Assembly: GCA_037447605.1 (NCBI GenBank)
Contig: CM074820.1
Coordinates: 1,612,001 to 1,676,000 of the forward strand
Reading direction: 5' to 3'
Source of the DNA: Zygnema circumcarinatum SAG 698-1b
Taxonomy: Eukaryota > Plantae > Zygnematophyceae
DNA length: 64,000 nucleotides
Shown: piece by piece, positions 35,117 through 54,291 of the stretch
How positions within the stretch are numbered: position 1 is the stretch's first letter
Layout of the letters: each line of letters starts with the position of its first letter
Notes under the pieces: generated by a model
What the model was told of the DNA's origin: nothing
Database searches by the model: none
Seen by the model: only the letters and a program-made list of their open reading frames with translations
Translations under genes and position numbers: made by a program

Positions 35117-37526
35117 CTCTCTCTCACTTCCCCTCCCCCCCCTCTCTCTCCAATCCTTTGTTTCGTTCGAGCACCCTTGCAACCACTTAGTTCAGTGTAA
35201 GTCCCCACTACAGCCGAGCCACATCATGTGTGTCCAATGCTTGCCGTCTTCACCCAAATACATCCGTCGCGTGTGCATTTCTGCTCCTTTCCTTCATTCA
35301 GTCAATGATGTTGATGTTGTTGATGTTGTTGTTGTTGCTGTTCTTGTCCCTTGCAATGCAGCGAGCACCCCGCTGCCTTTGCTCTGAAACTGAGCTCGTC
35401 AGCTCTGAGGCGGATTCAGCTCACGGGCTCAGTCACGTTTTTATGAATGTCGCCAAAAACTCTATCGTCGATTGGATTTCATTGTCATTTCATGACCGCC
35501 CCACCTTGTGCATGTTTTCCCAATCCTCCGCAGAGTCGCACAACCTCTCTAAGGTTTCATGTCCGACGTCGCCGTTCAGCGTAGCTCCCAACAGTCCCCA
35601 CAGATGCTGTCCGCTATATGGACTCTCCATGTTCATGGAACTGCGAACTGCGAACGGGAATTCTCAAATTTTTAGCGTTCGAATTTTGCCAGCGCGTCCC
35701 CGCGCCCGGGGGGTCCGCCGCGAATTTTGACCGTATGGACAATTTCCTCTCCGCTGTCCTTTGTCGTTTTGCGCGCACAATCCGCCTTGAGCCTCGAATC
35801 CCGGGCGTCGGATCCGCGATCTGCGGCGCGATTGAACTGGGTGGGTGGATCCGGAGAGGAATTCTGCCGCCCGGCGAGCGCTAACGGACAAGCGAATTTG
35901 CAGCCGGCCGGCAACTGTAACTGTCAGCCGTTTGTCGTACGTGAATCACACCGACATTTCTCGTTTGTCAGTTTGGGAAAGGCCGCGATCCGCAGTCGGC
36001 GGCAGGGCGACCTGGCCCTGCAGATACGACAACAGTTATAGCACTGTATGTGATCACACGTGTTAGCCGCCCGGACCCGGCTTTGAATGTCGGTAGAAGC
36101 GAAAATCAATGGCAGAAGGGACGAGCGTTCAGTGATATCCAGGCTGGCACGTTCATTTTTTTGGATTCTCCTGCCGTACACGTACGAATGGAAGACATTT
36201 TGTCGTTTTGCGAGGAAGTCAACCTCGGATTTTGCGGTCTTAACAGACCCGCATCTGCGGCAGGGAAAGCCGACGGCCGGAAATTTGGGTCGTGGAACAT
36301 CGGACGGTCAGATTTGGCCGATGGTCGCTTTCAGGCGGTCCTGGCACCATCCGATCGTCTGCTTTGGTCGGCACGCACGGGCTTCGGGCAAGCTAACGGC
36401 TGCCGCGACCGCAGGAATCCACCCCCGACAAGAGAAAGTCAAATCCATTTTTTAGAGGAAAAAAAGATTAGAATGTCAGCATTACTGCAAGGAACATGCG
36501 CTCTCTAAGATCTGGATTGGATCAAAACTGTTATTACTCTACCTCAACATTGCATATAGAATAACATTTTAACCTGCCCGAAATTCGTTCCAGCCTGCCC
36601 GCCAAACGGTTACGCCTCGCGCCGCGTCTCCGCCGCCGCTCGCTTTTGGCCGTCCGCGTCTTCCGCCGCCCTCCCTTCCTGTCCGTACAATATTTCCGTA
36701 CATATACTCAATCATTGGAGTGTTCGTACACGCCCCGCGCTTCCCTCAACGGCTGCCCTCTCCGCGCGCCACCTGTCCCATCCAAGGCCCATTCGTACGC
36801 CCACTCTCCGTCTCCGTGCACCATCTGTCATCATTGCCCCCAGAAACGCCAAAAACCGCATGCGCAAGATCCAAAACATCCCAACCCGCCCGCCCGCCGC
36901 GGTCTCCGCCCCACCGCTGCCTAATTTGTCACGTAGCGCCACGTGGCACCCCTGGAGCCGTCAGGGCCCAGCCCGCCGTGTCTGCGTGCCCGCTTTTTGT
37001 CGCGTAGCGGAAGCCCCACACCTACCGGCCGGCCCGGCGCGTCCGGCCCGTGAGCGGACGCCACGTGGTCCGTACGGTCGGCCGCCGCTGCGCGCCGCCC
37101 GGGCGGGCGCCTCCCTCCTCGCGGCGGCGGAGGGAGGGGGCCGGGTCCCGCTGACGCGCCCCTTTAATTGGGGGGAGGGAGCGGGGCGAAAGGGACAGAC
37201 AGCGGGGAGCGGGAGAGAGGGAAAGAGAGAGACAGAGAGAGAGGGTGATATAGATTTGGAGGAATAGGGGGAGAGCAGACGCAGGAGAGGCACTGGGAGG
37301 AGAGAGAGATAGAATACTGGACGAGAGAAGAGGAAGAGGAAATAAAGAGAGAGAGAGAGGTGAGAGAGAGAGTGGGGGGGAGAAAAATTTAGATGCTAAT
37401 TAATTAAAGGGGAATCTCAGAATAGAATTAGAAGAAGCTCAGGTTACCGATTAAGTCTGAGAAACCGCCAGCACAGAGTGAGATAGAAAGGGAGAGACAG
37501 AGACACAGAGAGAGAGAGAGCGAGCC

Positions 37527-39572
37527 ATGGCGGGGCATACGCAGCTGCATGGAAGCAGAAGGAGAATCGAATCTTTCTCTCTTTGCCACACCCTAACCCT
37601 CCTCTCCCTCCTCTCCCTCACCTCCTACCTCACGTGTGCGGCAGCCATGGCCGCCAGCTCAAGCCCGACCGCCTTCGAGCTCGTCCTCTCCGTCAGAGAG
37701 AGCCCTCCCTCCCCTCCCACCATCCGCCATTGGACTCAAGTGGAGAAGATTAAGAGAGAGAGAGAGAGGGAGAGGGAGAGGGAGAGGGAGGCTCAACAGA
37801 AGGACAGCCCCATTCAAGGGGGCACTCCTCTCCCGGACCCCCTGAAGCGCCTACGTGGCCTCCCCTCAGAGGAGCCACGTGGCAGGAGGCGATTGTCCGG
37901 CGAGGGCGGACGGAACTACGGCCTCGTGGCGCCGACTCTGACGGCGGAGCCGAGCAGGGCGAGTGTGAACGCGAGCTACCGCTGGGAGAGCCACGTGGCG
38001 GTGCCGGATTGGGTCGACTGGCGAACCACGGGGGCGAGGACACGTGTACACGACCAGCAGGGGGTGAGTGGAGGGAGGGAGGGAGGGAGGGCGGGAGAGG
38101 GGCTGGGAGGGAGAGGGGCTGGGAGGGAGGGGGGGTGGGAGGGAGAGCGAATGGGAGAGTAGGGGGACGGGAGGGAGAAAAATCCCTAAAACCCTAAAAA
38201 CCCTTGCACGCAAGGATGTAGTCCTCTCATTTTCTTACTTTCTCCATCACCAGAACTTCAGAAATTTTAAGAAAAGAAAAAAAAAAATCAAGACCCTAAC
38301 CGTTACCGCACTACGCTGTCGTCCCTTTCCCCAAATTCAGTTACTTAACTATACCCCATTTGTAACCAAGCCTTCCAAAGCCTTACAAAGAATGCCTTTC
38401 CCCCTTGTACCCCTTTATTAACCCTTCCGTTCCAACCAACTTTTTCCTTCCCTGCAGTGCAACAGCTGCTGGGTCCTCTCCACTGCTGACGCCATCACGA
38501 TGATGTCACTCATCAACTTCGGCTATGGACTGCAAAGAACCAACGGAACTGTCCCCCCCAACGGAACTGTCCTCAGCAAAACTGTCCCCGGCAACGGCAA
38601 CGGGAGCGGGAACGGAAACGGAAACGGAACTGCCAACAGCAGCAAGGAGCCTCAGTTCGGCGGCGAGGGGTGGCTGGACGCGTCCCCGCAGGAGATCTGC
38701 GACTGCGGGCTGAGGGCCTCCTGCTGCGAGGGCGGCTGGCCGGAGGCGGCGCTGGATTACGTGTACACGACGGGGGGGGTGTCCACGTGGCAGGACTACC
38801 CCTACGTGGCGGCCAACCAGCAGTGCAAGGCCGCCGACATACGACAAACCGAACTCACGGTATGTGGGGTGGGGGCAGTTTTTTTGGGTGGGTTTGATTT
38901 TTTGAGGAATGAAGTGTTTGGGGGAGGAAGGAGTGAGTGAGGAGGAACATGTGTTCAATTTTTCAGTTGGGTTAACGTTACTATTTTTTGGTGGGGGAAA
39001 AGCAGATTTCGGGGTGGGAGGCGGTGCCGGCCCGGAACGTGCACGCGATGAAGCAGGCGGTCGCCAATGGGCCTGTCATTGCCTTCATGAACGCCGACTC
39101 CCTTTTGGTGCGTCTCTTTCTCTCACTCTCTCTCTCTCTCTGTCTGTCCCTTTTGGGACCCCCCTGTATCCTCCCTCTCCCACTCCATCTCCCTCCCATG
39201 GACGCTTGCTGAAATACACCGCGCCCCTACTTTCTGCTTGCAGGATTACTCGGGCGGCTTTTTCGACGGTCCCTGTGGGACCCACCTGAACCACGTGGTG
39301 CTCATAGTGGGGTACGGAGTGTGCCCTGTGAACGGACCGTACTGGATCGTTAAGAACACATGGGGGGCGCACTGGGGCGACGACGGACACATCTACCTCA
39401 AGGCCACTGAGGGGGAGGGGGCCTGCGGCATCACTAGGTGAGTCTGGGGGAGAGGGAGTGAGAGAGAGAGAGAGAGAGGGGAAGAGGGAGAGGGACAAGG
39501 TCGACAAGGTCAAGATGGTGGGAAAGTGGACAAATGAGCGAGATATTGACACGTATCTAACTCTCCCTTCTC

Positions 39573-39614
<42 letters not shown>

Positions 39615-42091
39615 GCAGCATCCAGAGTCTGTTCCCGGTTCGCTACCCTCCGGAGAACCCCTGCAGCGCTCTCCCCAACCCTTGCGGGGCGGGCCAGTGC
39701 TTCCTTCAAACGAGAGAGGACGGGCAGGCGGTCGGCCGCTGCTCCTGCCCTCCCGGCTTCGTGGAAAGCCCCCACACAAACCCTGCCAAGTGCGTGCGCG
39801 CTGAACCCTGCTCGCAAAACCCCAACCCTTGCGGGGCGGGCTCGTGCGGAAACCTCGCCGACGGAAACTACTTCTGCGCCTGCGATGAGGTGAGTTCGGA
39901 TGTGGGCCAAGAATTTGGGCTCTAGGGCATGGCATGTCGGTTAGGTCGATGTTGTGATGTTGTTATGGTAGGTGATTTCTTGAAGGGTTTGAATGTCATG
40001 AAATGTGACTAAATTTTGTGCAATTTTTTTTGGGGTTCAGGGTCACATCATCGGCGCTAGAGCCGACGGAGCGCCAACATGTGTCGGGGGATTTGGTGAC
40101 GGAGCGCAGACGTATACAGTCACCCCTGGTGACACGTGTCAGGTGAATACAACAGAGAAAAGGGAAACAGAGTGATGGGGTAATTGAAGAAGGGTCCTTT
40201 TGGCTTCTTTCTAATTTCTCTTGACTTACTAACCCTCTTCCCTCTCGTTCTCTCTTTCTTTCTCTCTCTCTCTCTCTTTGCAGGTGATTGCAGACAAATG
40301 GGGCACCACAACGGAGCTCTTCCGTGAGCTCAATGATTGGGTCAACTGCTCTAAGCCTCTCCCAATTGGTAAGCTCAAATCAACCTCTCCCTCCTTCTCT
40401 CTCTCCCCACTTCCTGCTTCTTGTTTCCTTTTCATTTCCAGTCAATCCGTATCTTCCAAGCCATAAACCAATCTCTGACTTCTGCCTCTCGCTTTCCATG
40501 GGACAGGTGTCGCTGTCGTAGTGGCCGATCTCGGAACTGCAACGGCGTGTCGATGGAACTACATAGTTCAAACCAACGACACGTGTTCGAGCATCGCAAC
40601 GGAACGGGCCGTGAGCATGGAACAGCTCCTCGCCTCCAACCCCCCCATCAACTGCTCCTCCCCCCTCCTTGCGGGGACCGAGATCTGCCTCGAACCGGGC
40701 GCCCTCTCCGACGAGGAGCCTCCCCAATGCGCCAAACTGCACGCCGTGACAGAGGGTGACACGTGCGACATCGTCAAGGAAAAATTCGGAATATCGCACG
40801 AAAACTTTCTCAGGTGAATACAACAGAGGCTATGTGAAGGGGGAGATGGGGGGATGATGATGGCATGGCAGGAAGTTTTTTTTGACGCATGACGTCATGT
40901 TTTTGGTGATGGTTGGCATCGCTGACGGTTGTTTGTCTGGGGCGGTTTTTTGCTGACGTCAGGTTGAATCCCGGCTTGAGCTGCGGCGGGCAGCTTCCAC
41001 CCGCACTCAGCGTCTGCACCGGCACGGTGAGCCTCTCTCTCTCTCGATAAACTAGCCAATTAAGCATCTTTACTTTTTTTTTTTAAAACATGTCAATTTT
41101 CTTTTGATAGAGAAGAACGTGAAATTCAAGAAGCCTCAAATTAACGTTTTTTTCCCCCTTTTTTCCCTTGTTATCGTGTGTTTTTCCAGAGCGCCGGCGA
41201 GCCCCCCTCCTCCAGCCACTGCACGCGGTGGTACCGCGTGAAGCAGGGCGACAAGTGCCCCATGCTCTGGGCCGCCGCCAACGTCACCGTGACAGAGTTC
41301 ACCAGGATGAACCCCGGCGTCAGAGTACGCTCGAAAACCCCATATAGCCCCATTCTCAGTTTTTAGTTCCCAGTTGCAGTTCCAGTTCCCGTTTCCAGGT
41401 TGCCAGTTCACGTTCTCACCAATTGCATGTCGCCACGTGTCTGCAGTGCTTCGCTCCCTACTGGCGCGTCGGCCAGATGGTCTGCCTCGCCGACATCCTC
41501 ACCGAGCAGCCCATGGGCCCCGAGATTCTGTCGTACACCGTATCTGCCGGAGATACGCTCTACACGATCTCAGATATCATGTCGGATCTCTGCGGACCAA
41601 TCGCATCCCCGAGCGCCCTCTCTCTCCTCAACTCCGTATCCCCAGATTCTCTCCTCTCCCCAGACCGTACGATCAAGATCCCCTGCAACGACGCCCCCGG
41701 CAGATCCTGCGGCTGCAAAGCCGACAAAGCCGTCTTCGGCGACGACGGCGTATGGTACTCCTCCCAATGCGACGCCCAATGCAACTACGCGCTGCCCACG
41801 TCCACGTCCTCCAACATTTGCAAACTTGCGTGCAAGAAAAGGACGGGCCTAGCGCCCGCCGACACTGTGAACGCGTCCAAGACGCCCAAGTCGTGCAGCG
41901 CGCCGTGCCCGTTCCCTGTATGGGCGCCGTTTCCGTTCCCGGGATGGACGGCGGCGCAGAAGTGCAAGTACTATGTGGAGGCATGCACGGCATGGTGCTC
42001 GGACGCGGCCACAACAATAGGGGGGAACACGTCCACGTGGACCAAGAATGTGAACAACTGCGTGTTCGCGTGCAAGAAGGGGAAGTGCTGA
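37527..42091 (+). CDS. Secreted papain-family (C1A) cysteine protease fused to 2 EGF-like, 5 LysM, a Kazal-like and a Cys-rich C-terminal domain; join(37527..38063,38458..38859,39006..39107,39244..39437,39619..39889,40041..40142,40284..40368,40507..40813,40963..41026,41190..41324,41447..42091)
   Basis: All 11 exons join in frame via GT-AG. Signal-like [33 protein letters not shown]|CNSCW (oxyanion Gln and catalytic Cys), [18 protein letters not shown] (His), YWIVKNTWG (Asn). EGF-like [15 protein letters not shown] and [16 protein letters not shown]. LysM starts [45 protein letters not shown]. Kazal-like [25 protein letters not shown]. Confidence 0.93.
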
Positions 42092-43604
42092 GAGAGGGAG
42101 AGTGGAGAGTGGAGTGGGAGAGGGAGAGGGAGAGGAGAGGGGTGCGGCAGGAACACGATTCGGGAGATGGTCGTTTTGGAGGGGAAAATGGGGAATTTGA
42201 TGTGTTGAGGATGCGGATCGGATCGGATCGGATCAAGTGCGAGATACGGCTGGGAGATCTGCCCTGGATTTGGGGCTGAGATTCTCAAGTGGGATTCTCA
42301 TGATCGAGGTCTCAAGAGCCACCAATTATTATTTTTTTGATGGAAAATTCGGCGCATGTATGGGCCAAGAACAGCACCACCACCACCACCACCACCACCG
42401 CCATCGATCCCAGGACTTGCCACGTGGCGCTATCCAGGCCGTCCAGTCGATGACCTTCCTTCGACAACTTCCGCTATATGCAGTTTTGGCCACAATATGT
42501 CGAGAGATTATTTCCTCTCGAGTTTATGGTTCGGATCCGACCCGGTCCTCTCTGACGATGGGAGCCATGGCTTGCCACGTGCGAGGATGCAATAACGAGA
42601 TATGTGTGCAGGGCCTGCAGGGGGAAGGCTCTGCATGCGCTGATTTTGGCTGATTAAGCTTTAGACTATTAAATTTTTATATAACACTGTACATGACTTA
42701 GCTGAAATGACAAGCGCGCGCAGCATCGTAGATGAGGTCGAGCATGCATGCGTGGAGGTGTATGATAGCACAAGGATTAGGGTTAGGGGTTAAGGGTTTT
42801 AGGGCTCCCGATTAGTAACTCTTCATTGCTTTAGTTGGCTCTCGCTCGCTCGCACCTCGACCTTTAGAGTGACTATTTGTGCCTGTCTTGAATATGAGCT
42901 GCAAGCGCGCCTATTATTTATAGGCCGCTGCGCTCACTGCACTGTACATGGAGGAAGAAAAATGTATGTAGCATAGGAGCAGGGTCTGCGCAGGACCAAG
43001 CGGATGCAATGCTTATTTATTTACGATTTAATTCTTAAATTTGGTGCCCCTTGGTAGGGCTTTTGAATGAAGAGAACTCTGTCGTTCCCAGACTCTGCAT
43101 GTATGCCTAAAATGATTATGCTTATTTTAAGGTGGTTTGTGATTACTCGTTTCTTGACTCTCCGGTAACAAATTAGGGCTATGTTTGCTTTTGCAGCAGG
43201 GTCGTAGGTTGAGACTTAGCATCGTCTTGTTGTTTTATTCCTGCAGATGTGTGACTACCTGGTAATGGGGACACTTAGGGAGGTGTTGCAGTTATGAGGA
43301 TATGCTGGCCATACAAAGGGCGATGATTACATGCAGAGAAAAACAAAAAAAGGAGTGGGCCCTGCGGAGGAAGGAAAACAAGTGCGAGAAATTGAGAATG
43401 AGGGGCGAGTAAGGGAGCGGAGGGAGAGGGGGAGGAGGGAGGGGGAGGGAGGAGATGGAGAGGGAGTTGGGAAGGGCGAGGTGCGGTGTGATGGAGTAGG
43501 ATGGAGAGAATCAGAGGGCAAGTAAAGATGAATGCAGATGGTAGAATAAGTAGGTGGTGGAAAGAGGGAGGGAGAAGGTTAGGAAGTTAACAGAACAAAA
43601 CAAA

Positions 43605-48350: not shown

Positions 48351-51300
48351 ATGGCGATGCGGCGGAGGAGAGCGGGCCTCCTCCTCGTCACTATGGCCTC
48401 GGCAGTCATGGCGTGGCAGGTCCTCTCTCTCTCTCTCCCTCTCTCTCTCGCCCTCTCTCTCTCTGTTTCTCCCTCTCTCTCTCCCCTCTCTGTGCATGAT
48501 GATACTTGCCAGGCTTCACCCCTCCCTCTCTCTCTTTCTCTCGCTCTCTCTCTCCCCTCTCTGTGGACAATCCCACTTGCCGGCCTCCCTCCCTGCCCTC
48601 TCCCTTGCCCTTTCCCACTCTCTCTCCCCACACTCCTCCCCCCCTCCCTCTCTCACTCCCCCCCTAAAAGCACTTCCTCTCATTCTCTCTGTCTCCCTTC
48701 CTCACATTCACCCCCCCTTTTCTTCCCTCCCCTCCTCCCTCTCCCCACCCTCTCCCTTTCTGTCTCTCGCTCTTATCCTCCTCACTCCCCCTCTCCCACC
48801 CCCCGTCTCTCTCTCTTTCTCCCCCTCACTCTCTCTGTCGCTCCCCCCCCTCCTCTCTCTCTCTCTCTCTCCCTCTCCCACTCCCTCCCTCTCTCTCAGG
48901 TCATAAGCAAAGCACTGCTCGTGCAAGACAGTTCCGTACATCCACTTCCCTCCAGAAATTCCTTCAATTCGAGAAAAAAAAATTCCAGTTCTGCCCTTCT
49001 GGAAGTCAAACGGATCGAGTTTCGGCGCCTGCCCGGAAAAAAAAAGCCTCTCTTTATTCCCGAGAAAAAGACAAAAAGAAAACCGAAAATTTCTATTGGC
49101 ACGGCCCAGGTACCTCTCACAGCCGCTGAAAAATAATCGATTTTTTAAATTAAAGAAAGAAAAAACTGAAAAGAAGAAAAAAACAAGAGAAGGAAGGGGC
49201 AGAGTTTTTGAGCGGCTTTACAGAAGAGAAAGTGGCACTTTTCTATTGTAGTTTGTAATTTTTAAAAATAGAATTGTTATTTTTTTCTCATTGTGAATTA
49301 CAGGAAGTCGAGGTTCAAGTTCATTATGAAAAACCGCTGGAAGATCCTCCCTACCGATTGGACGCCACGTGTCCCTCTCCGAACCGGGTCCAATCAGAGG
49401 CTGCCACCTGGCAGCAGCGCACTTTCAAAGAGCATCCTGCAAGTGGGTTTGTTCAATTCAGGTGGGCCCTCTTATGCAATTATTATCTAAATATATTTTT
49501 CCAACAACTTTGGAGTAGTGAAAAGTTCACCGGGTGTCTTGAACTTACACAATTTCCTCTCCCACTCCCTCTCTTCCTCTCTCCCTCTCTCCCTCTCTCC
49601 CTCCCTGCTCTCCCCCTCCTATTCCTTTCTCCCCTCCCCTCTCCCTCTCATACTCTGTCCCCATTCTCTCTTTCTTCCCCCCTCCTCTCTATTCTCTCTC
49701 CCTCTCTCTTTTTCTCTCTCTCTTTCTCCCTCTCCCTCCCTCTCCCTTTCTCTCCCTTCCCCCATCTCCCTGTCTCCTCCCCATTCTCTTCCTCGTCCTT
49801 CCCTTTCTGTCCCCCCTCTCTCTCCCCCTTCTCTCTCCCCATCTGCCTCTCTCTCCCCCCACTCTTCCTTTCTCTCGCTCTCCCTCCCTCCCTCCCTCCC
49901 TCTCTCCGTATCTCTCCCTCTCTCTCTCCCTCTCCCTCGCTCCCTCTCTCTCCCCCTCCCTCTCCCTCCCCCAGCGCCTACCGCATGGGGTCCACCCGCT
50001 TCGCCGCCATTGGTCTGCAGAACAGGACGTGCGACCGCCACGTGGCGGGGCGGCCCATGGAACGGCCCGCCACATCGACCCGTCAGTTCCGTTACTCCGT
50101 TGAACTGAACGGCAGCGATTCCGTCTGCCAATGGCGGGACGCTGTGGGGCCCACAATTTTCGGACGGCTCGAATTTCTGTACTCGTGGGAACACCACGAC
50201 CAGGAGGTGGGGCTCGCTCGCCTCTCTCCCTCCCTCTCTCTCTCTCTCTCTCTCTAGCTCTTTCTCTCTCGTCTCTCTTTCTCTCACTCCCTCCCTTTCT
50301 CTTGCTCTCTCTCTACCTCCCTCTCCCTCATGTCACGTGCCTCCGTGTCCCTCCCTCCCCCCCATTTTTTCCCCTACCTCTCCCTTCTTTCCCCCCTCCT
50401 TTCTCCCTCTATCTCTCTCGTTTCTCTCTTCTCTCTCTCTCTCTCACTCTCTCCCACTCTCTTCCGCTCTCCTACCTTCCCCTTCGTCCTGTTGCGTGTC
50501 TCCCTGCCCCCTCTCTCCCTCCCTCACCCTCCTTGCCTCTCTACCTCTCCCTCCCCTCTCTCCCTNNNNNNNNNNCCCACTCCCTCCCTCTCTCTCAGGT
50601 CATAAGCAAAGCACTGCTCGTGCAAGACAGTTCCGTACATCCACTTCCCTCCAGAAATTCCTTCAATTCGAGAAAAAAAAATTCCAGTTCTGCCCTTCTG
50701 GAAGTCAAACGGATCGAGTTTCGGCGCCTGCCCGGAAAAAAAAAGCCTCTCTTTATTCCCGAGAAAAAGACAAAAAGAAAACCGAAAATTTCTATTGGCA
50801 CGGCCCAGGTACCTCTCACAGCCGCTGAAAAATAATCGATTTTTTAAATTAAAGAAAGAAAAAACTGAAAAGAAGAAAAAAACAAGAGAAGGAAGGGGCA
50901 GAGTTTTTGAGCGGCTTTACAGAAGAGAAAGTGGCACTTTTCTATTGTAGTTTGTAATTTTTAAAAATAGAATTGTTATTTTTTTCTCATTGTGAATTAC
51001 AGGAAGTCGAGGTTCAAGTTCATTATGAAAAACCGCTGGAAGATCCTCCCTACCGATTGGACGCCACGTGTCCCTCTCCGAACCGGGTCCAATCAGAGGC
51101 TGCCACCTGGCAGCAGCGCACTTTCAAAGAGCATCCTGCAAGTGGGTTTGTTCAATTCAGGTGGGCCCTCTTATGCAATTATTATCTAAATATATTTTTC
51201 CAACAACTTTGGAGTAGTGAAAAGTTCACCGGGTGTCTTGAACTTACACAATTTCCTCTCCCACTCCCTCTCTTCCTCTCTCCCTCTCTCCCTCTCTCCC

Positions 51301-54291
51301 TCCCTGCTCTCCCCCTCCTATTCCTTTCTCCCCTCCCCTCTCCCTCTCATACTCTGTCCCCATTCTCTCTTTCTTCCCCCCTCCTCTCTATTCTCTCTCC
51401 CTCTCTCTTTTTCTCTCTCTCTTTCTCCCTCTCCCTCCCTCTCCCTTTCTCTCCCTTCCCCCATCTCCCTGTCTCCTCCCCATTCTCTTCCTCGTCCTTC
51501 CCTTTCTGTCCCCCCTCTCTCTCCCCCTTCTCTCTCCCCATCTGCCTCTCTCTCCCCCCACTCTTCCTTTCTCTCGCTCTCCCTCCCTCCCTCCCTCCCT
51601 CTCTCCGTATCTCTCCCTCTCTCTCTCCCTCTCCCTCGCTCCCTCTCTCTCCCCCTCCCTCTCCCTCCCCCAGCGCCTACCGCATGGGGTCCACCCGCTT
51701 CGCCGCCATTGGTCTGCAGAACAGGACGTGCGACCGCCACGTGGCGGGGCGGCCCATGGAACGGCCCGCCACATCGACCCGTCAGTTCCGTTACTCCGTT
51801 GAACTGAACGGCAGCGATTCCGTCTGCCAATGGCGGGACGCTGTGGGGCCCACAATTTTCGGACGGCTCGAATTTCTGTACTCGTGGGAACACCACGACC
51901 AGGAGGTGGGGCTCGCTCGCCTCTCTCCCTCCCTCTCTCTCTCTCTCTCTCTCTAGCTCTTTCTCTCTCGTCTCTCTTTCTCTCACTCCCTCCCTTTCTC
52001 TTGCTCTCTCTCTACCTCCCTCTCCCTCCTTGTCTCTCTACCTCTCCCTCCCTCTCCCTCCCTCCCTCCCTCTCTCCCTCCCTCTCTCCCTCTCTCCCTC
52101 CCTCCCTCTCTCCCTCCCTCCCTCTCTCCGTATCTCTCCCTCTCTCTATCTCTCCCTCTCTTTATCTCTCCCTCTCTTTATCTCTCCCCCTCTCTCTCTC
52201 CCTCCCTCCCTCTCTCTATCTCTCCCTCCCTCACCCTCCTTGCCTCTCTACCTCTCCCTCCCCTCTCTCCCTCCCTCACCCTCCTTGTCTCTCTACCTCT
52301 CCCTCCCCTCTCTCCCTCCCTCACCCTCCTTGCCTCTCTACCTCTCCCTCCCCTCTCTCCCTTAATCCGTTAAACGGAAACTGTGCAGATGGAAACCCTA
52401 ACAGTTCAGTGCATATTGGAGGCCCCCACAAGCACGTGCGGCGGAATTTTGGAGGGAAATTTTCAAGGAGAAAATGTTGTCCTATTCCAAGAATGGCCCG
52501 GAGAGGTACATCTGCAAATTTTCAAATCTAAAAGAATTTTTTTTTTTGTTTTGTTCAATAGTAAAAGGCACATTGAAAGGAAGGAAAATGGACTCATTCT
52601 TTTTGTTGCCTTTCTCCATTACTTCCCTTTCATTTCCTTTTTTTATTTCCTTTTTCTTCCCCTTTTTTGGGGCAGGTTAAGCATCCCCAACATCACTTTT
52701 TCCCCTCCAACATCACTTTTTGCTCGCCGACTTTACATACCGATCTGAGGCGGGAGGCGGTAATAGAGTGGATTTGGTACCATGACGTCATCACACGTGT
52801 GAACAAGTACATATTGTACGACTCAGGCGTGTGGAATGCTGAGCTGGCAGTCCCCCTAGCGCGACACGTGGCGACCGGAGTCATAGAGCTGACCGACTTT
52901 TCCGGGCAGGAAAAATATCCCACTTGGTTTCATTCTCAGGTGGTTCCCGGAAACCTTCTGAAGCCCAATAAAAGCTCAATAAAAATTTACAGAACTGACC
53001 CCTTTTTTCCACCCCTTTCTAACCCCATTTTTTCATTTTTTTTTTTCTTCTTTTCTGGTTTCTTCTCTTAAACCAGATGCTCGCCCTCCAAGACTGCATT
53101 TACAGAACGAGATTTTCCTCTAAGTGGATTTTTGTGGCGGATTTTGACGAATATTTAGAACCGGTACCCCCCTTCTCCCTGCCCTCCCTTTTGGCCAAAT
53201 ACGAGCACAAGGCGTGGCTCTCCTTCGGCGGAGTTTGGTGGGACATCAATTTGTGCGAACCCGAAAAAAAATCGGAAAAAAATTTGGACCGAAAAACCAG
53301 GTTTGCGATCGAAAACCTGGTTTTCCGCGCGGACGGGTTTTTTTGCGCGCGGGCAGCCCCGCCGGGCGGGCGGACGTGCACGAGGGGGAGGGCGGACTGG
53401 CCGGGCAGCGTCTGCAAAAAACTTTTTGGGGAACTTTGCGACGCGCATTTCGGGCGGCGAAAGTTTTTTGTCAATCCTCGGAAGGTGGTGGTAGCCCCTG
53501 ACACCCTGAACCCTAAACCCTAAAGCCTCAACCCTAACGGCTAACCTTAAACCTTGAAGCTTAAACCCTAAACCCTGACGCCTACCCACTAAACCCTAAC
53601 CCCGCAACCCGAAACCCTAATTCTCTAAACCTTAACGCCTACCCCCTAACCCCGAAACCCTAAACCCTAACACCTCCCCCCTAAACCCTAACCCCTCAAC
53701 CCTTAGCTCTAAATCCTAACAACTCTAACCCCATAACCCCTGAACCCTAGCCCCGCAACCCTAAACCCTAAACTCTAAACCCTAACGCCTACCCCCTACA
53801 CCGTAACCCCTCAACAGTAACCGCTAAATCCTAACAACCCTAACCCCCTAACCCCTAAACCCTAACCCCAAAACCCTAAACCCTAACGCCTACCTCCTAT
53901 ACCCTAACCCCGAAACCCTAAACTCTAAACGCTAACCCCATCCCCCTAAACCCAAAGCCCTAAATCCTAAACCCTAAACTTTAAACCCCACCCCCTCCCC
54001 CCTAAACCCTACCCCCCGAAGCTGTCGCAGGTGGACCTTGCGGGCATCCACGAGGTGTTGGAGCCGCGCGGCAACGGCGTCTCCCTGAACGCGCGCACTC
54101 AGTTCCGTTTGAACCACTTCCGCTGGCTCGCCTCGCAGCGCGCCGTTCCGTTTTTCTGCAACGGAACGGAGGACGGAGGACATGGAGAGGAGGGGGAGGG
54201 CCCGTGGGTGCGCGACTTGGGCCTCGCGGAGAAGGGGCGGAGGGCGAGGGAGGCGAAGAGCCAATGGGAGAGGGAGGGGCAGGATTGGTGA
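48351..54291 (+). CDS. Glycosyltransferase family 92 (DUF23), galactan beta-1,4-galactosyltransferase GALS-like, type II membrane protein
   Basis: N-terminal MAMRRRRAGLLLVTMASAVMAWQV; AYRMGSTRFAAIGL; ITFCSPTLHTDLRREAVIEWIWYHD..YILYDSG; SQ|MLALQDCIYRTRFSSKWIFVADFDEYL (DxD); GRRKFFVNPRK|VDLAGIHEV..FRLNHFR. Two or more exons are duplicated by the artefact at 48880..52030. Confidence 0.85.
48880..52030. other. Near-identical ~1.45-1.7-kb direct duplication (offset 1699) across N gap 50566..50575; probable assembly artefact
   Basis: Identical ORFs 49274..50257 and 50973..51956; the copies diverge only in the CT-rich tract next to the gap. Confidence 0.85.
53510..54010 (-). repeat. Telomere-like (AAACCCT)n tract in the last GT92 intron
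   Basis: Dense aaaccct/aacccct units. Confidence 0.9.

What the first reader, a model, noticed from the sequence alone, without database searches (positions are those of the whole stretch)
37527..42091. Secreted papain protease - EGF x2 - LysM x5 - Kazal-like fusion: a candidate glycan-targeted protease
Seen: one 11-exon ORF with an intact C1A catalytic set (Gln, Cys in CNSCW, His in NHVV, Asn in KNTWG), two EGF-like modules, five LysMs, a Kazal-like module and a Cys-rich tail. LysM1-4 carry internal Cys pairs (GDTC..NP..C..C) reminiscent of fungal secreted LysM effectors; LysM5 looks more plant-like. Established: LysMs bind GlcNAc polymers (chitin, peptidoglycan). Land-plant papain-like immune proteases carry at most a granulin extension, and LysMs occur in separate receptors. 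Inference: this alga combines recognition, proteolysis and a protease-inhibitor-like module in one extracellular protein, for defence against fungi, chytrids or bacteria, or for wall or mucilage remodelling in conjugation. I do not recall a characterised protein with this architecture, though predicted homologues may exist.
Basis: partly seen in the sequence, partly recalled or inferred. Interest (0 to 1): 0.82.

Follow-up and report, generated by a model that had tools for sequence, protein, structure and literature searches.

The report
Secreted LysM-tethered papain protease gene
This is a real, expressed 11-exon gene of a conjugating green alga for a secreted papain-type protease joined to five sugar-binding LysM modules and a degenerate Kazal-type tail; it is the plainest member of a large, unstudied protein family found in these algae, and its function has not been tested.

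Summary
The 11 GT..AG exons (37527-42091, +) splice into a 947-aa ORF. Spliced transcript contigs from four studies reproduce the introns, and one contig joins the protease exons to the LysM exons.

The protein has these parts:
- a signal-like N-terminus and a short pro-region with no I29 prodomain;
- a papain (C1A) domain with Gln177, Cys183, His364 and Asn385 intact;
- two six-Cys EGF-like modules;
- exactly five LysMs;
- a Kazal-like module;
- a Cys-stapled helical tail.

The Kazal call is below threshold in this copy. At family level it is supported: the family profile matches leech tryptase inhibitor at E 1.6e-4. This copy has lost the C3 and C6 cysteines together.

The gene is not unique. 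Collinear proteins occur in Mesotaenium, Spirogloea and Closterium, and their protease domains form one clade. This scan has already reported at least eight longer paralogues elsewhere in this same genome. The C1A+LysM combination was catalogued in Chlamydomonas in 2009 and 2019.

The four-Cys LysM pattern matches fern and horsetail chitinase LysMs, so it gives no sign of fungal transfer.

My best reading is a protease held on GlcNAc polymers of microbial walls. That function is inferred, not shown.

The parts
37527..42091 (+). Whole coding region. The 11 exons are 37527-38063, 38458-38859, 39006-39107, 39244-39437, 39619-39889, 40041-40142, 40284-40368, 40507-40813, 40963-41026, 41190-41324 and 41447-42091 (stop codon 42089-42091). 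The product is 947 aa.
   Evidence: Splicing by hand gives an open frame with GT..AG at every intron. Spliced contigs from four studies show the same joints, and one contig spans exons 1-11.
37527..37655 (+). N-terminal signal-like segment (aa 1-43): basic RRR, then a hydrophobic stretch at aa 17-43.
   Evidence: It is the most hydrophobic 19-residue window of the protein (Kyte-Doolittle 1.64). Homologues also begin with a hydrophobic N-terminus. The cleavage site is inferred, not predicted by a tool.
37656..37997 (+). N-terminal extension or pro-region (aa 44-157). It includes a (GA)n-encoded Arg-Glu repeat and a family-conserved ~45-aa stretch just before the mature start VPDWVDWR. No I29 prodomain is present.
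   Evidence: No Inhibitor_I29 hit at E<=1. The conserved motif is seen in the family alignment. The equivalent 54 residues of homologue P0002 are predicted disordered, with pLDDT <50.
37998..39643 (+). Papain-family (C1A) peptidase domain, aa 158-420, spread over exons 1-5. Catalytic codons: Gln177 38055-38057, Cys183 38467-38469, His364 39292-39294, Asn385 39355-39357.
   Evidence: Pfam PF00112 at 1.5e-12 (exon 2) and 8e-16 (exon 4). The best solved relatives are bromelain, ervatamin and dionain, at E about 1e-16 on exon 4 alone. The catalytic columns are conserved in the family.
38533..38676 (+). Asn/Gly-rich insertion (aa 205-252) in a loop of the protease domain. It has several N-x-S/T sequons and is absent from the homologues.
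   Evidence: Family alignment and composition. Transcript contigs break or diverge here, with loose ends at 38630-38634.
39662..39793 (+). EGF-like module 1 (aa 427-470), with six Cys in C-x6-C-x4-C-x13-C-x-C-x14-C spacing.
   Evidence: Read directly from the sequence. Pfam is below threshold (Pvs28 EGF E 0.0037, cEGF 0.021). All six Cys are conserved in the family.
39809..40082 (+). EGF-like module 2 (aa 476-516), split by intron 5.
   Evidence: Six-Cys spacing read directly. Pfam EGF E 0.093 on the exon-5 part. In homologue P0008 the EGF reaches 21.7 bits against a cut-off of 21.5.
40113..40520 (+). LysM1 (aa 527-569), crossing introns 6 and 7.
   Evidence: Independent LysM profile, i-E 1.3e-7. 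Repeat alignment.
40560..40688 (+). LysM2 (aa 583-625), four-Cys type.
   Evidence: Pfam LysM 1.5e-10, 41.3 bits. Independent profile 1.1e-9. Same Cys spacing as the Equisetum and Pteris chitinase-A LysMs 5bum and 4pxv.
40740..41017 (+). LysM3 (aa 643-685), four-Cys type, crossing intron 8.
   Evidence: Independent profile, i-E 2.5e-5 over aa 643-673. Repeat alignment.
41232..41485 (+). LysM4 (aa 703-746), four-Cys type, crossing intron 10.
   Evidence: Pfam LysM E 7e-4 on the exon-10 piece. Independent profile 1.1e-4.
41534..41683 (+). LysM5 (aa 763-812). It lacks the internal Cys pair and has a longer helix-1 loop.
   Evidence: Pfam LysM 3.1e-5, 24.3 bits. Independent profile 2.6e-7. The predicted beta-alpha-alpha-beta fold matches solved LysMs: Z 8.6 at rmsd 1.6 A over 54 residues, and Z 8.0 at rmsd 1.4 A over 48.
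41708..41812 (+). Degenerate non-classical Kazal-like module (aa 821-855): C-G-C-x6-F-G-D-D-G-x-W-Y-x3-C-x3-C-N-Y. The third and sixth Kazal Cys are replaced by Phe830 (41735-41737) and Ser855 (41810-41812).
   Evidence: In the window, Kazal_2 scores only E 0.32, 11.6 bits. The family profile hits leech tryptase inhibitor at E 1.6e-4, and infestin, dipetalin, rhodniin and ovomucoid at 0.016-0.06. Three members hit Kazal_2, best 3.3e-5. Paired Cys losses follow the Kazal disulfide map. The transcript contigs show no differing letters here.
41819..42088 (+). Cys-rich C-terminal tail (aa 858-947). Its last ~45 aa (41951-42076) are predicted as a helix-loop-helix carrying C-x6-C-x3-C ... C-x3-C-x4-C.
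   Evidence: No Pfam family. The Cys are invariant in the family. The model shows helices at exon-11 residues 169-191 and 195-210, and no significant structural match (Z about 3).

Best explanation
The gene encodes a soluble secreted papain-type (C1A) endopeptidase whose C-terminal half is a targeting and protection cassette.

Shown
- The gene is real and spliced as read, and it is transcribed as one message.
- The catalytic tetrad is intact.
- There are five LysM modules, two six-Cys EGF-like spacers, a Kazal-derived module and a disulfide-rich tail.
- The whole arrangement is an old, conserved family of zygnematophycean algae. This copy is the 'headless' basic form.

Inferred
- The five LysMs bind GlcNAc-containing polymers multivalently. 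These would be chitin of fungal or chytrid walls, or bacterial peptidoglycan, neither of which the alga's own wall contains.
- Binding would hold the protease at high local concentration on a foreign cell surface, where it cuts wall or surface proteins.
- The logic is the same as in bacterial LysM-NlpC/P60 wall hydrolases and in LysM-chitinases of ferns and Volvox.
- The EGF pair would act as a rigid spacer.
- The Kazal-like and helical-hairpin tail may protect the protein from microbial serine proteases or serve only as a structural cap.
- Because no I29 prodomain is present, latency must be controlled in another way, perhaps by the short conserved N-terminal extension.
For: - Gene model and single spliced contig from protease to LysM exons in four studies.
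- Peptidase_C1 above threshold and catalytic residues aligned.
- Five LysMs found by an independent profile.
- LysM5 fold at Z 8.6, rmsd 1.6 A.
- LysM2 shares its four-Cys spacing with the solved LysM domains of fern and horsetail chitinase A.
- The family is collinear over its full length in Mesotaenium, Spirogloea and Closterium.
- The protease domains form one clade, SH-aLRT 91.
- Other Closterium proteins join C1A domains to other glycan binders. P0044 (C1A + CBM14 chitin-binding) came up in the full-length search; P0071 (C1A + legume lectin) came up in the LysM-region search. Neither was placed in the protease tree.
- Paralogues in this genome carry hevein, CBM14 or LRR heads (unchecked notes).
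- Kazal homology holds at family level and Cys losses are correlated.
- Signal-like N-terminus, 54 Cys, 12 N-glycosylation sequons and no further hydrophobic segment.
Against: - No binding, activity, localisation or expression-on-challenge data exist for any family member.
- LysMs can bind other glycans or act in self-wall processes.
- The absence of an I29 prodomain leaves folding and activation unexplained.
- One family member, P0012, has Ser in place of the catalytic Cys, so not all members need be enzymes.
- The Kazal module in this copy scores below the Pfam threshold and lacks one disulfide.
- The 5' 270 nt, including the start codon and signal region, are only thinly covered by contigs.
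Confidence: 0.5

Rival explanations
1. A developmental or self-directed extracellular protease. The LysM array would anchor it in the alga's own wall or mucilage. It would process wall proteins during growth, wounding or conjugation, as suggested for the pheromone- and wound-induced cysteine protease of Volvox.
For: - PMC2474614 records that a Volvox C1A protease (VcPap-11) is induced by the sex pheromone, citing Amon et al. 1998.
- Solved LysM structures exist for the Volvox chitinase (5k2l, 5yz6).
- Spliced contigs are present in all four runs laid, which come from four studies. Culture conditions are not on record.
Against: - Zygnematophycean walls are not known to contain chitin or peptidoglycan (my own knowledge).
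- The family has diversified with chitin-type heads such as hevein and CBM14, which points to foreign glycans.
- No expression data by life stage were available here.
Confidence: 0.2
2. A sensing or decoy protein rather than a weapon. The LysMs would capture chitin or peptidoglycan fragments, and the protease domain would release or process signals. Alternatively the whole protein would serve as bait for pathogen inhibitors. Catalysis on microbial walls would not be the point.
For: - Paralogues in the same genome carry LRR receptor-type heads (unchecked notes).
- One Closterium member has lost the catalytic Cys.
- Closterium P0072 joins LRR, C1A, LysM and a lectin.
Against: - This copy has no LRR, no transmembrane segment and no kinase.
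- Its catalytic residues are intact and conserved across the family.
Confidence: 0.12
3. A nutritional enzyme. A protease held on microbial or detrital GlcNAc polymers would free amino acids for uptake.
For: Only the architecture itself. Bacterial and fungal saprotrophs use glycan-binding modules on secreted proteases in this way (my own knowledge).
Against: - No evidence for induction by nitrogen limitation.
- A large, diversifying family with receptor-like heads fits interaction with other organisms better than bulk digestion.
Confidence: 0.08
4. Remodelling of a plastid peptidoglycan layer, by analogy with the LysM-M23 (DipM-type) peptidases of streptophytes.
For: - LysM-peptidase M23 proteins are the next-best non-family matches to the LysM region (P0065, P0070).
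- Plastid peptidoglycan exists in streptophyte algae and mosses (abstracts of PMC9434261 and PMC4015805).
Against: - EGF modules, 54 Cys and 12 N-glycosylation sequons point to the secretory pathway, not the plastid.
- The N-terminal hydrophobic segment fits the same reading.
- C1A enzymes are not known to cut D-amino-acid stem peptides (my own knowledge).
Confidence: 0.03
5. A gene-model artefact: two adjacent genes, a protease and a LysM protein, wrongly read as one.
For: In three of the four runs exon 1 sits on a separate short contig, and some contigs diverge at 38634, 40405 and 40719.
Against: - One 2922-nt contig (X1) covers exons 1-11, and contigs of 2331-3288 nt in the other three runs cover exons 2-11. 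All joints keep the frame.
- The same collinear protein is predicted in at least four other taxa and on an independent genomic contig, L001.
Confidence: 0.02

Closest known systems
Unnamed predicted proteins of Zygnematophyceae, for example Mesotaenium endlicherianum ME000082S09941 (P0002), Spirogloea muscicola SM000162S02345 (P0039) and Closterium sp. NIES-68 GJP32645.1 (P0012)
   Same: - Full-length collinearity: short N-extension, C1A, two EGF, five LysM, Kazal-like module and Cys tail.
- 34-44% identity over the full length.
- The protease domains form one clade, with the window gene sister to the four Mesotaenium paralogues.
   Different: - This copy has a 48-aa Asn/Gly-rich loop insertion.
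- It has lost the Kazal C3-C6 cysteine pair. It shares that loss only with its nearest relative P0001/L001.
- None of these proteins is named or studied.
Longer paralogues in this same genome noted by the scan (LRR, PAN, hevein or CBM14 'heads' on an EGF-papain-EGF-LysM body)
   Same: The same protease-EGF-LysM chassis, according to those notes. I did not re-examine them.
   Different: This gene has no head at all, only a signal peptide and a short extension. Whether the paralogues also carry the Kazal-like tail is not known to me.
Chlorophyte peptidase_C1 + LysM proteins: Chlamydomonas reinhardtii (catalogued by Zhang et al. 2009, PMC2728734, and Van Holle and Van Damme 2019, PMC6362431), and the Volvox pheromone- and wound-induced cysteine protease of Amon et al. 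1998
   Same: A papain-family domain and several LysMs on one secreted-type protein. Both surveys record the combination as absent from vascular plants.
   Different: - The Chlamydomonas forms carry galactose-binding, SRCR or C-type lectin modules, and no Kazal-type tail is listed.
- I could not obtain their sequences, so common descent versus convergence is untested.
- That the Volvox protease carries chitin-binding repeats is my recollection only. The paper was not held.
Bacterial LysM-NlpC/P60 cell-wall endopeptidases (B. subtilis LytE, 8i2e; T. thermophilus, 4uz2 and 4xcm)
   Same: - Tandem LysMs tether a cysteine peptidase to a GlcNAc polymer.
- Their LysMs are among the best sequence and structure matches to LysM5.
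   Different: - The catalytic domain is family C40, not C1A.
- It cuts peptidoglycan stem peptides.
- The domain order is reversed, with LysMs N-terminal.
- The resemblance is of working principle, not of family.
LysM-chitinases of ferns and horsetails (Pteris ryukyuensis and Equisetum arvense chitinase A; 4pxv, 5ylg, 5bum)
   Same: LysM2 aligns with them with all four Cys in register, C-x11-C-x22-C-x9/10-C. In both cases a LysM is joined to a secreted hydrolase.
   Different: The catalytic partner is a GH18 chitinase rather than a protease, and there are one or two LysMs rather than five.
Non-classical Kazal inhibitors (leech-derived tryptase inhibitor 1an1/2kmo; infestin, dipetalin, rhodniin)
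   Same: The family consensus C-x-C-x6-C-G-x-D-G-x-x-Y-x3-C-x3-C-N-x9-C matches their short C1-C2 spacing. E is 1.6e-4 to 0.06.
   Different: - Here the module is embedded in a 947-aa protease.
- This copy keeps only two of the three disulfides.
- The residue at the P1 position is not conserved across the family.
- Inhibitory activity is untested.
Land-plant papain-like cysteine proteases of the RD21 type (I29 prodomain, C1A, granulin)
   Same: A cathepsin-L-like catalytic domain, 33-39% identical (P0077 of Mesostigma, P0078 and P0087). It is extracellular or vacuolar with a Cys-rich C-terminal extension.
   Different: - No I29 prodomain.
- The extension is EGF, LysM and Kazal, not granulin.
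- The family forms a clade apart from the I29- and granulin-bearing enzymes.

Membership tests
Peptidase family C1A (papain) | Match to the Pfam Peptidase_C1 profile above its gathering score | tested here: met
   48.5 bits on exon 2 and 59.2 bits on exon 4, against a cut-off of 20.7.
Peptidase family C1A (papain) | Catalytic Gln-Cys-His-Asn in register with papain Gln19, Cys25, His159 and Asn175 | tested here: met
   Q177, C183, H364 and N385. They align to bromelain and sit at the catalytic columns of the family alignment; the Gln, His and Asn columns are invariant there and the Cys column is nearly so.
Peptidase family C1A (papain) | Thiol-dependent proteolytic activity | not testable with these tools
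   Needs the expressed protein and labelling with E-64 or DCG-04.
Cathepsin-L-like plant PLCPs (RD21, SAG12, XCP type) | N-terminal I29 inhibitor prodomain (ERFNIN/GNFD) | tested here: not met
   No Inhibitor_I29 hit at E<=1 on exon 1, and none in nine homologues with a protease domain. The N-extension of P0002 is predicted disordered.
LysM (Pfam PF01476, CBM50) | Profile match above the gathering score | tested here: met
   LysM2 41.3 bits and LysM5 24.3 bits, against a cut-off of 20.9. LysM4 scores 19.9 on a truncated piece. An independent profile finds five domains at i-E 1e-9 to 1e-4.
LysM (Pfam PF01476, CBM50) | Beta-alpha-alpha-beta fold | tested here: met
   Tested for LysM5 only. In the model, block-mean pLDDT over the LysM5 core is mostly 76-90. 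Matches: Z 8.6 at rmsd 1.6 A over 54 residues to SleL, and Z 8.0 at rmsd 1.4 A over 48 residues to 4uz2.
LysM (Pfam PF01476, CBM50) | Binding of GlcNAc polymers | not testable with these tools
   Needs pull-down or ITC with chitin, chito-oligomers and peptidoglycan.
EGF-like domain | Six Cys in C-x(4-7)-C-x(4-5)-C-x(5-13)-C-x-C-x(8-14)-C spacing | tested here: met
   Both modules were read directly. The Cys are conserved across the family.
EGF-like domain | Pfam EGF-type profile above the gathering score | tested here: inconclusive
   In the window the scores are 13.5-17.7 bits, below the cut-offs, and EGF2 is split by an intron. Homologue P0008 reaches 21.7 bits against 21.5.
Kazal-type inhibitor domain (MEROPS I1; PF00050, PF07648) | Profile match above the gathering score | tested here: not met
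   The window copy scores Kazal_2 11.6 bits against 22.8, E 0.32. At family level, 3 of 20 members hit Kazal_2 (best E 3.3e-5), and the family profile hits LDTI at E 1.6e-4.
Kazal-type inhibitor domain (MEROPS I1; PF00050, PF07648) | Six Cys forming C1-C5, C2-C4 and C3-C6 | tested here: not met
   The window has four of the six: C3 is Phe830 and C6 is Ser855. In the family, C3 and C6 are lost together (window, P0001), and C1 and C5 are lost together (P0035/P0019, two products of one gene). This fits the Kazal pairing.
Kazal-type inhibitor domain (MEROPS I1; PF00050, PF07648) | Inhibition of a serine protease | not testable with these tools
   Needs inhibition assays with the isolated module.
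Zygnematophycean C1A-EGF-LysM-Kazal-tail family (unnamed) | Collinear alignment over the full length with the same module order | tested here: met
   19 homologues align end to end at 34-44% identity. tblastn shows the same order on genomic contig L001.
Zygnematophycean C1A-EGF-LysM-Kazal-tail family (unnamed) | Protease domain inside the family clade | tested here: met
   The 21 family rows fall on one side of a branch (SH-aLRT 91). The window gene is sister to the Mesotaenium paralogues (87). This is a quick tree without bootstrap.
Bacterial LysM-NlpC/P60 endopeptidases | NlpC/P60 (C40) catalytic domain | tested here: not met
   The catalytic domain is Peptidase_C1. The likeness is one of working principle only.
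Chlorophyte C1A-LysM proteins | Shared descent of the fused gene | not tested
   No chlorophyte C1A-LysM sequence came up in the searches. These searches are word-limited and not exhaustive.

The most novel reading that the evidence does not exclude
- A LysM-guided papain protease attacks chitin- or peptidoglycan-walled microbes.
- Its own C-terminal two-disulfide Kazal module and CX3C helical hairpin neutralise the microbes' secreted serine proteases.
- Alternatively, that tail stands in for the missing I29 prodomain as a latency or folding device.

If so, recognition, proteolysis and counter-proteolysis were once joined in one chain and were later split in land plants into LysM receptors, free PLCPs and free inhibitors.
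Probability: 0.15. Interest if true: 0.75.

Novelty: new variant of a known kind. Interest (0 to 1): 0.5.

Why it matters
Land plants keep chitin recognition (LysM receptors) and apoplastic papain-like proteases on separate proteins. Their closest algal relatives hold a large, conserved and expressed family in which the two are one chain.

This member is the simplest form of that family, with no added head, so it is the most tractable for expression and assay. If the LysMs bind chitin or peptidoglycan and the protease is active, the family would be a pre-land-plant form of extracellular defence. It would give a direct handle on how plant immune modules were assembled and later separated.

Two smaller points stand on their own. 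One is a C1A protease lineage without the I29 prodomain. The other is a Kazal-derived module whose paired cysteine losses trace its disulfide map.

Tried and rejected
1. Full-length searches with the window protein. A multi-exon protein cannot be passed by reference, so I worked with exon pieces and with homologues found from exon 11. The window's own protein is not in the libraries; the best hit is 42% identical.
2. Structural test of the Kazal module. Foldseek and VIA-align on the exon-11 model returned mainly LysM matches, plus weak matches (Z about 3) to the helical tail.
3. Chlorophyte C1A-LysM sequences. Three word-based searches and the Atlas returned none. even missed known Spirogloea and Closterium members, so these blanks say nothing about absence.
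4. Amon et al. 1998 (PMC144025) is not held. I found no open paper that describes the domain make-up of the Volvox protease.
5. Fungal gene transfer of LysM1-4 is rejected. The Cys pattern is shared with fern and horsetail LysMs. The nearest non-family relatives are LysM-M23 proteins and a LysM-kinase protein of unrecorded origin. All five LysMs are conserved in the family.
6. Tandem paralogues in the window: none.
7. Neighbouring long ORFs: eight were scanned against Pfam with no hit. They are probably spurious frames of GC-rich DNA or exons too short to score.
8. I did not establish the organism's name. Run and organism ids are coded.

Full report

Reading 37000-42600 and splicing by hand gives 11 exons: 37527-38063, 38458-38859, 39006-39107, 39244-39437, 39619-39889, 40041-40142, 40284-40368, 40507-40813, 40963-41026, 41190-41324 and 41447-42091. 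Every intron is GT..AG. The result is one open frame of 947 codons with 54 Cys.

Seven public runs of the same coded organism hold 56-64% of the sampled words of the stretch. That is about the exonic share. Laying the contigs of four of them, from four studies, shows spliced contigs with no differing letters. The joints 38859/39006, 39889/40041, 40368/40507, 40813/40963, 41026/41190 and 41324/41447 are exactly those of the model once the stated both-sides ambiguity is allowed for.

In run X1 one 2922-nt contig runs from exon 1 (37798) to beyond the stop (42104). In the other three runs contigs of 2331-3288 nt cover exons 2-11, and exon 1 lies on a short separate contig.

One caveat remains. 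Contigs break at the (GA)n repeat at 37742-37797, and only one run gives thin cover upstream. The start codon and signal region thus rest mainly on the genomic reading frame.

**2. The modules**

*Protease.* Pfam on exon pieces gives Peptidase_C1 on exon 2 (48.5 bits) and exon 4 (59.2 bits), against a cut-off of 20.7. Exon 4 alone matches bromelain, ervatamin, dionain, actinidin and cathepsin K at E 1e-16 to 1e-12. LNH and KNTWG align to the catalytic His and Asn motifs. Gln177 and Cys183 sit in VDWR...QQGCNSCW, the papain N-terminal motif.

*LysM.* Pfam LysM is above threshold for LysM2 and LysM5, and just below for the truncated LysM4 piece. Three of the five LysMs are cut by introns. I therefore built a LysM profile from 75 repeats of unrelated multi-LysM proteins and searched the spliced protein. 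It finds exactly five domains, at 527-569, 583-625, 643-673, 703-733 and 763-812, with i-E 1e-9 to 1e-4.

*EGF.* Both EGF-like modules have canonical six-Cys spacing but score below the Pfam threshold here. One homologue just reaches the threshold.

*Exon 11 model.* A model of exon 11 made with 19 homologues has mean pLDDT 74.9. Its LysM5 fold matches solved LysMs at Z 8.6 (rmsd 1.6 A, 54 residues) and Z 8.0 (rmsd 1.4 A, 48 residues). The last ~45 residues form a helix-loop-helix.

*Secretion.* The N-terminus has the most hydrophobic 19-residue window of the protein, and no later membrane-like segment exists. There are 12 N-x-S/T sequons. Secretion is inferred from these features and from the disulfide-rich modules.

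**3. The Kazal-like module**

In this copy Kazal_2 scores only 11.6 bits against a cut-off of 22.8, E 0.32. On its own sequence the call therefore fails.

The family tells more:
- A profile of the tail from 20 members hits leech-derived tryptase inhibitor at E 1.6e-4 and 3.1e-4. It hits infestin, dipetalin, an elastase inhibitor, rhodniin and ovomucoid third domain at 0.016-0.06.
- Three members hit Kazal_2, best E 3.3e-5, and one Closterium protein hits Kazal_1 at E 0.003.
- The family consensus, C-G-C-x6-V-C-G-A-D-G-x-x-Y-x-S-x-C-D-A-x-C-N-Y-A-x-P-x4-C, has the short C1-C2 spacing of the non-classical Kazal inhibitors.

Column by column, the window has Phe830 where 18 of 20 sequences have C3, and Ser855 where 18 of 20 have C6. 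The only other sequence lacking either lacks both. That sequence is P0001, the window's nearest relative. C1 and C5 are missing together in P0035 and P0019, which are two products of one Closterium gene.

These paired losses are what the Kazal disulfide map (C1-C5, C2-C4, C3-C6) predicts. I know that map from the inhibitor literature. I read the module as Kazal-derived, here in a two-disulfide form. The transcript contigs show no differing letters over this stretch, so the substitutions are not assembly errors. Whether it inhibits anything is unknown, and the residue at the P1 position is not conserved.

**4. It is a family, not a one-off**

A full-library search with exon 11 found only 30 proteins at E<=1e-3, the best at 42% identity. 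The window's own protein is therefore absent from the libraries.

Of the ten longest hits scanned, eight carry Peptidase_C1 plus several LysMs, mostly with weak EGF hits; P0019, a short product of one Closterium gene, has the EGF and LysMs only; P0006 is an unrelated multi-LysM protein. The family members come from Mesotaenium endlicherianum, Spirogloea muscicola and several Closterium strains. One comes from a transcriptome labelled Leptophrys vorax, an amoeba that eats such algae, so it is probably prey sequence. Two come from unlabelled Logan contigs. None is named.

Further searches added four Mesotaenium paralogues in all, at least six Spirogloea members and many Closterium members. Nineteen homologues align with the window protein end to end at 34-44% identity, with all modules in the same order. 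A 7.5-kb genomic contig from another organism (L001, GC 40% against 51% for the window) carries the same order.

In a quick tree of protease domains, the 21 family members lie on one side of a branch (SH-aLRT 91). They are apart from the I29- and granulin-bearing plant-type enzymes, from oomycete enzymes and from bacterial ones. The window gene is sister to the four Mesotaenium paralogues (87). Bootstrap was not run, so these supports are provisional. Spirogloea is the earliest branch of the class (my own knowledge), so the fusion probably predates the diversification of Zygnematophyceae.

The scan's own notes list at least eight other genes of this genome with the same protease-EGF-LysM body behind LRR, PAN, hevein or CBM14 heads. 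I did not re-test those notes. They mean that this gene is the headless basic form of a family already met several times in this genome.

**5. What differs in this copy and this family**

- No member has an I29 prodomain. Instead a ~45-residue conserved stretch precedes the mature start. In the model of P0002:1-310 the first 54 residues are disordered, with pLDDT <50.
- The window copy has a 48-residue Asn/Gly-rich loop insertion after the first helix of the protease. It is absent elsewhere, and contigs break there.
- One Closterium member (P0012) has Ser for the catalytic Cys.

**6. The LysM origin question**

The evidence does not support that split:
- The best solved matches to LysM2 are the LysM domains of Equisetum and Pteris chitinase A (E 0.026 and 0.034, weak as expected for 45 residues). 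All four Cys are in register.
- The profile containing LysM5 matches B. subtilis LytE and fungal Ecp6 best.
- Beyond the family, the LysM region is nearest to LysM-M23 peptidases and a LysM receptor kinase.

I see no evidence for fungal or bacterial transfer into this gene. The LysMs are inherited with the family.

**7. What is already known**

- Zhang et al. 2009 list peptidase_C1+LysM in Chlamydomonas as an architecture lost in land plants (PMC2728734).
- Van Holle and Van Damme 2019 list six Chlamydomonas proteins with C1A and LysM and none in Klebsormidium, Chara or land plants. They state that C1A-lectin combinations were not retained in vascular plants (PMC6362431). No zygnematophyte was in either survey.
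- PMC2474614 records that a Volvox C1A protease is induced by the sex pheromone, citing Amon et al. 1998. I recall that this protease and a co-induced chitinase carry chitin-binding repeats, but the paper was not available. LysM structures of the Volvox chitinase are in the PDB.
- I found no paper on the zygnematophycean family.

**8. How it most likely works**

The shown parts are an intact secreted-type C1A protease, five LysMs, rigid Cys-rich spacers and a Kazal-derived tail, all conserved and expressed.

The inferred part follows from the established role of LysM as a binder of GlcNAc polymers, and from the many hydrolases that use LysM as a tether. Examples are bacterial LysM-NlpC/P60 enzymes and fern, horsetail and Volvox LysM-chitinases. 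The LysM array would hold the protease on chitin or peptidoglycan surfaces, which for this alga are foreign.

Other Closterium proteins join C1A domains to CBM14 and to a legume lectin. By the scan's notes, paralogues here carry hevein domains. This fits a family built to bring a protease to particular glycans.

I give this reading about 0.5. The main rival is a self-directed developmental or wound role, as in Volvox, at 0.2. A sensor or decoy role (0.12), nutrition (0.08), plastid peptidoglycan (0.03) and artefact (0.02) follow.

**9. Verdict**

The gene is a new member, with some new features, of an unstudied but already catalogued kind. Interest is moderate. The family matters for the origin of plant extracellular immunity, and this copy is the simplest to test. 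It is neither unique nor functionally understood.

Noticed in passing
window 49274-52531: ORFs of identical length recur at an offset of 1699 bases (49274/50973, 49518/51217, 49619/51318, 50131/51830). This points to a tandem duplication of about 1.7 kb. Two of these frames gave no Pfam hit.
   Followed up: partly
window 53503-54011: An interstitial array of about 72 degenerate copies of the plant-type telomere unit ACCCTAA. A short CCCTAAA run also lies in intron 1 of the gene, near 38185-38205.
   Followed up: no
window 38630-38634, 40405, 40719: Besides the main spliced contig, lower-depth contigs in several runs match up to these points and then continue with unrelated letters. One point is in the Asn/Gly-rich insert, one is inside intron 7 and one is between LysM2 and LysM3. 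They could be a paralogue, an allele, retained introns or assembly breaks.
   Followed up: no
window 37742-37797 (and 37180-37526 upstream): A (GA)n microsatellite is translated as an Arg-Glu repeat ([14 protein letters not shown]) inside exon 1. Similar GA-rich tracts fill the 5' flank and several introns. All transcript contigs break at this repeat.
   Followed up: no
P0012 (Closterium sp. NIES-68 GJP32645.1): This family member has CASSW in place of C-x-S-C-W. The catalytic Cys is replaced by Ser while the rest of the protein is conserved. It may be a pseudo-protease.
   Followed up: no
P0044, P0071, P0072, P0008 (Closterium spp.): - Closterium proteins join a C1A domain to other modules: CBM14 chitin-binding (P0044), legume lectin (P0071), and LRR plus LysM plus lectin (P0072).
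- P0008 has a Cupin_3 domain after the tail, possibly a merged gene model.
   Followed up: no
P0007 ('Leptophrys vorax' transcriptome, EukProt): A family member is filed under an algivorous vampyrellid amoeba. It is most likely prey (zygnematophyte) sequence in that transcriptome.
   Followed up: no
window 41951-42076 (aa 902-943): The C-terminal helix-loop-helix carries CX3C on each helix, with invariant Cys at 913, 917, 938 and 942. This is the motif I recall for plant alpha-hairpinin defence peptides. No structural or profile test supports it (Z about 3).
   Followed up: partly
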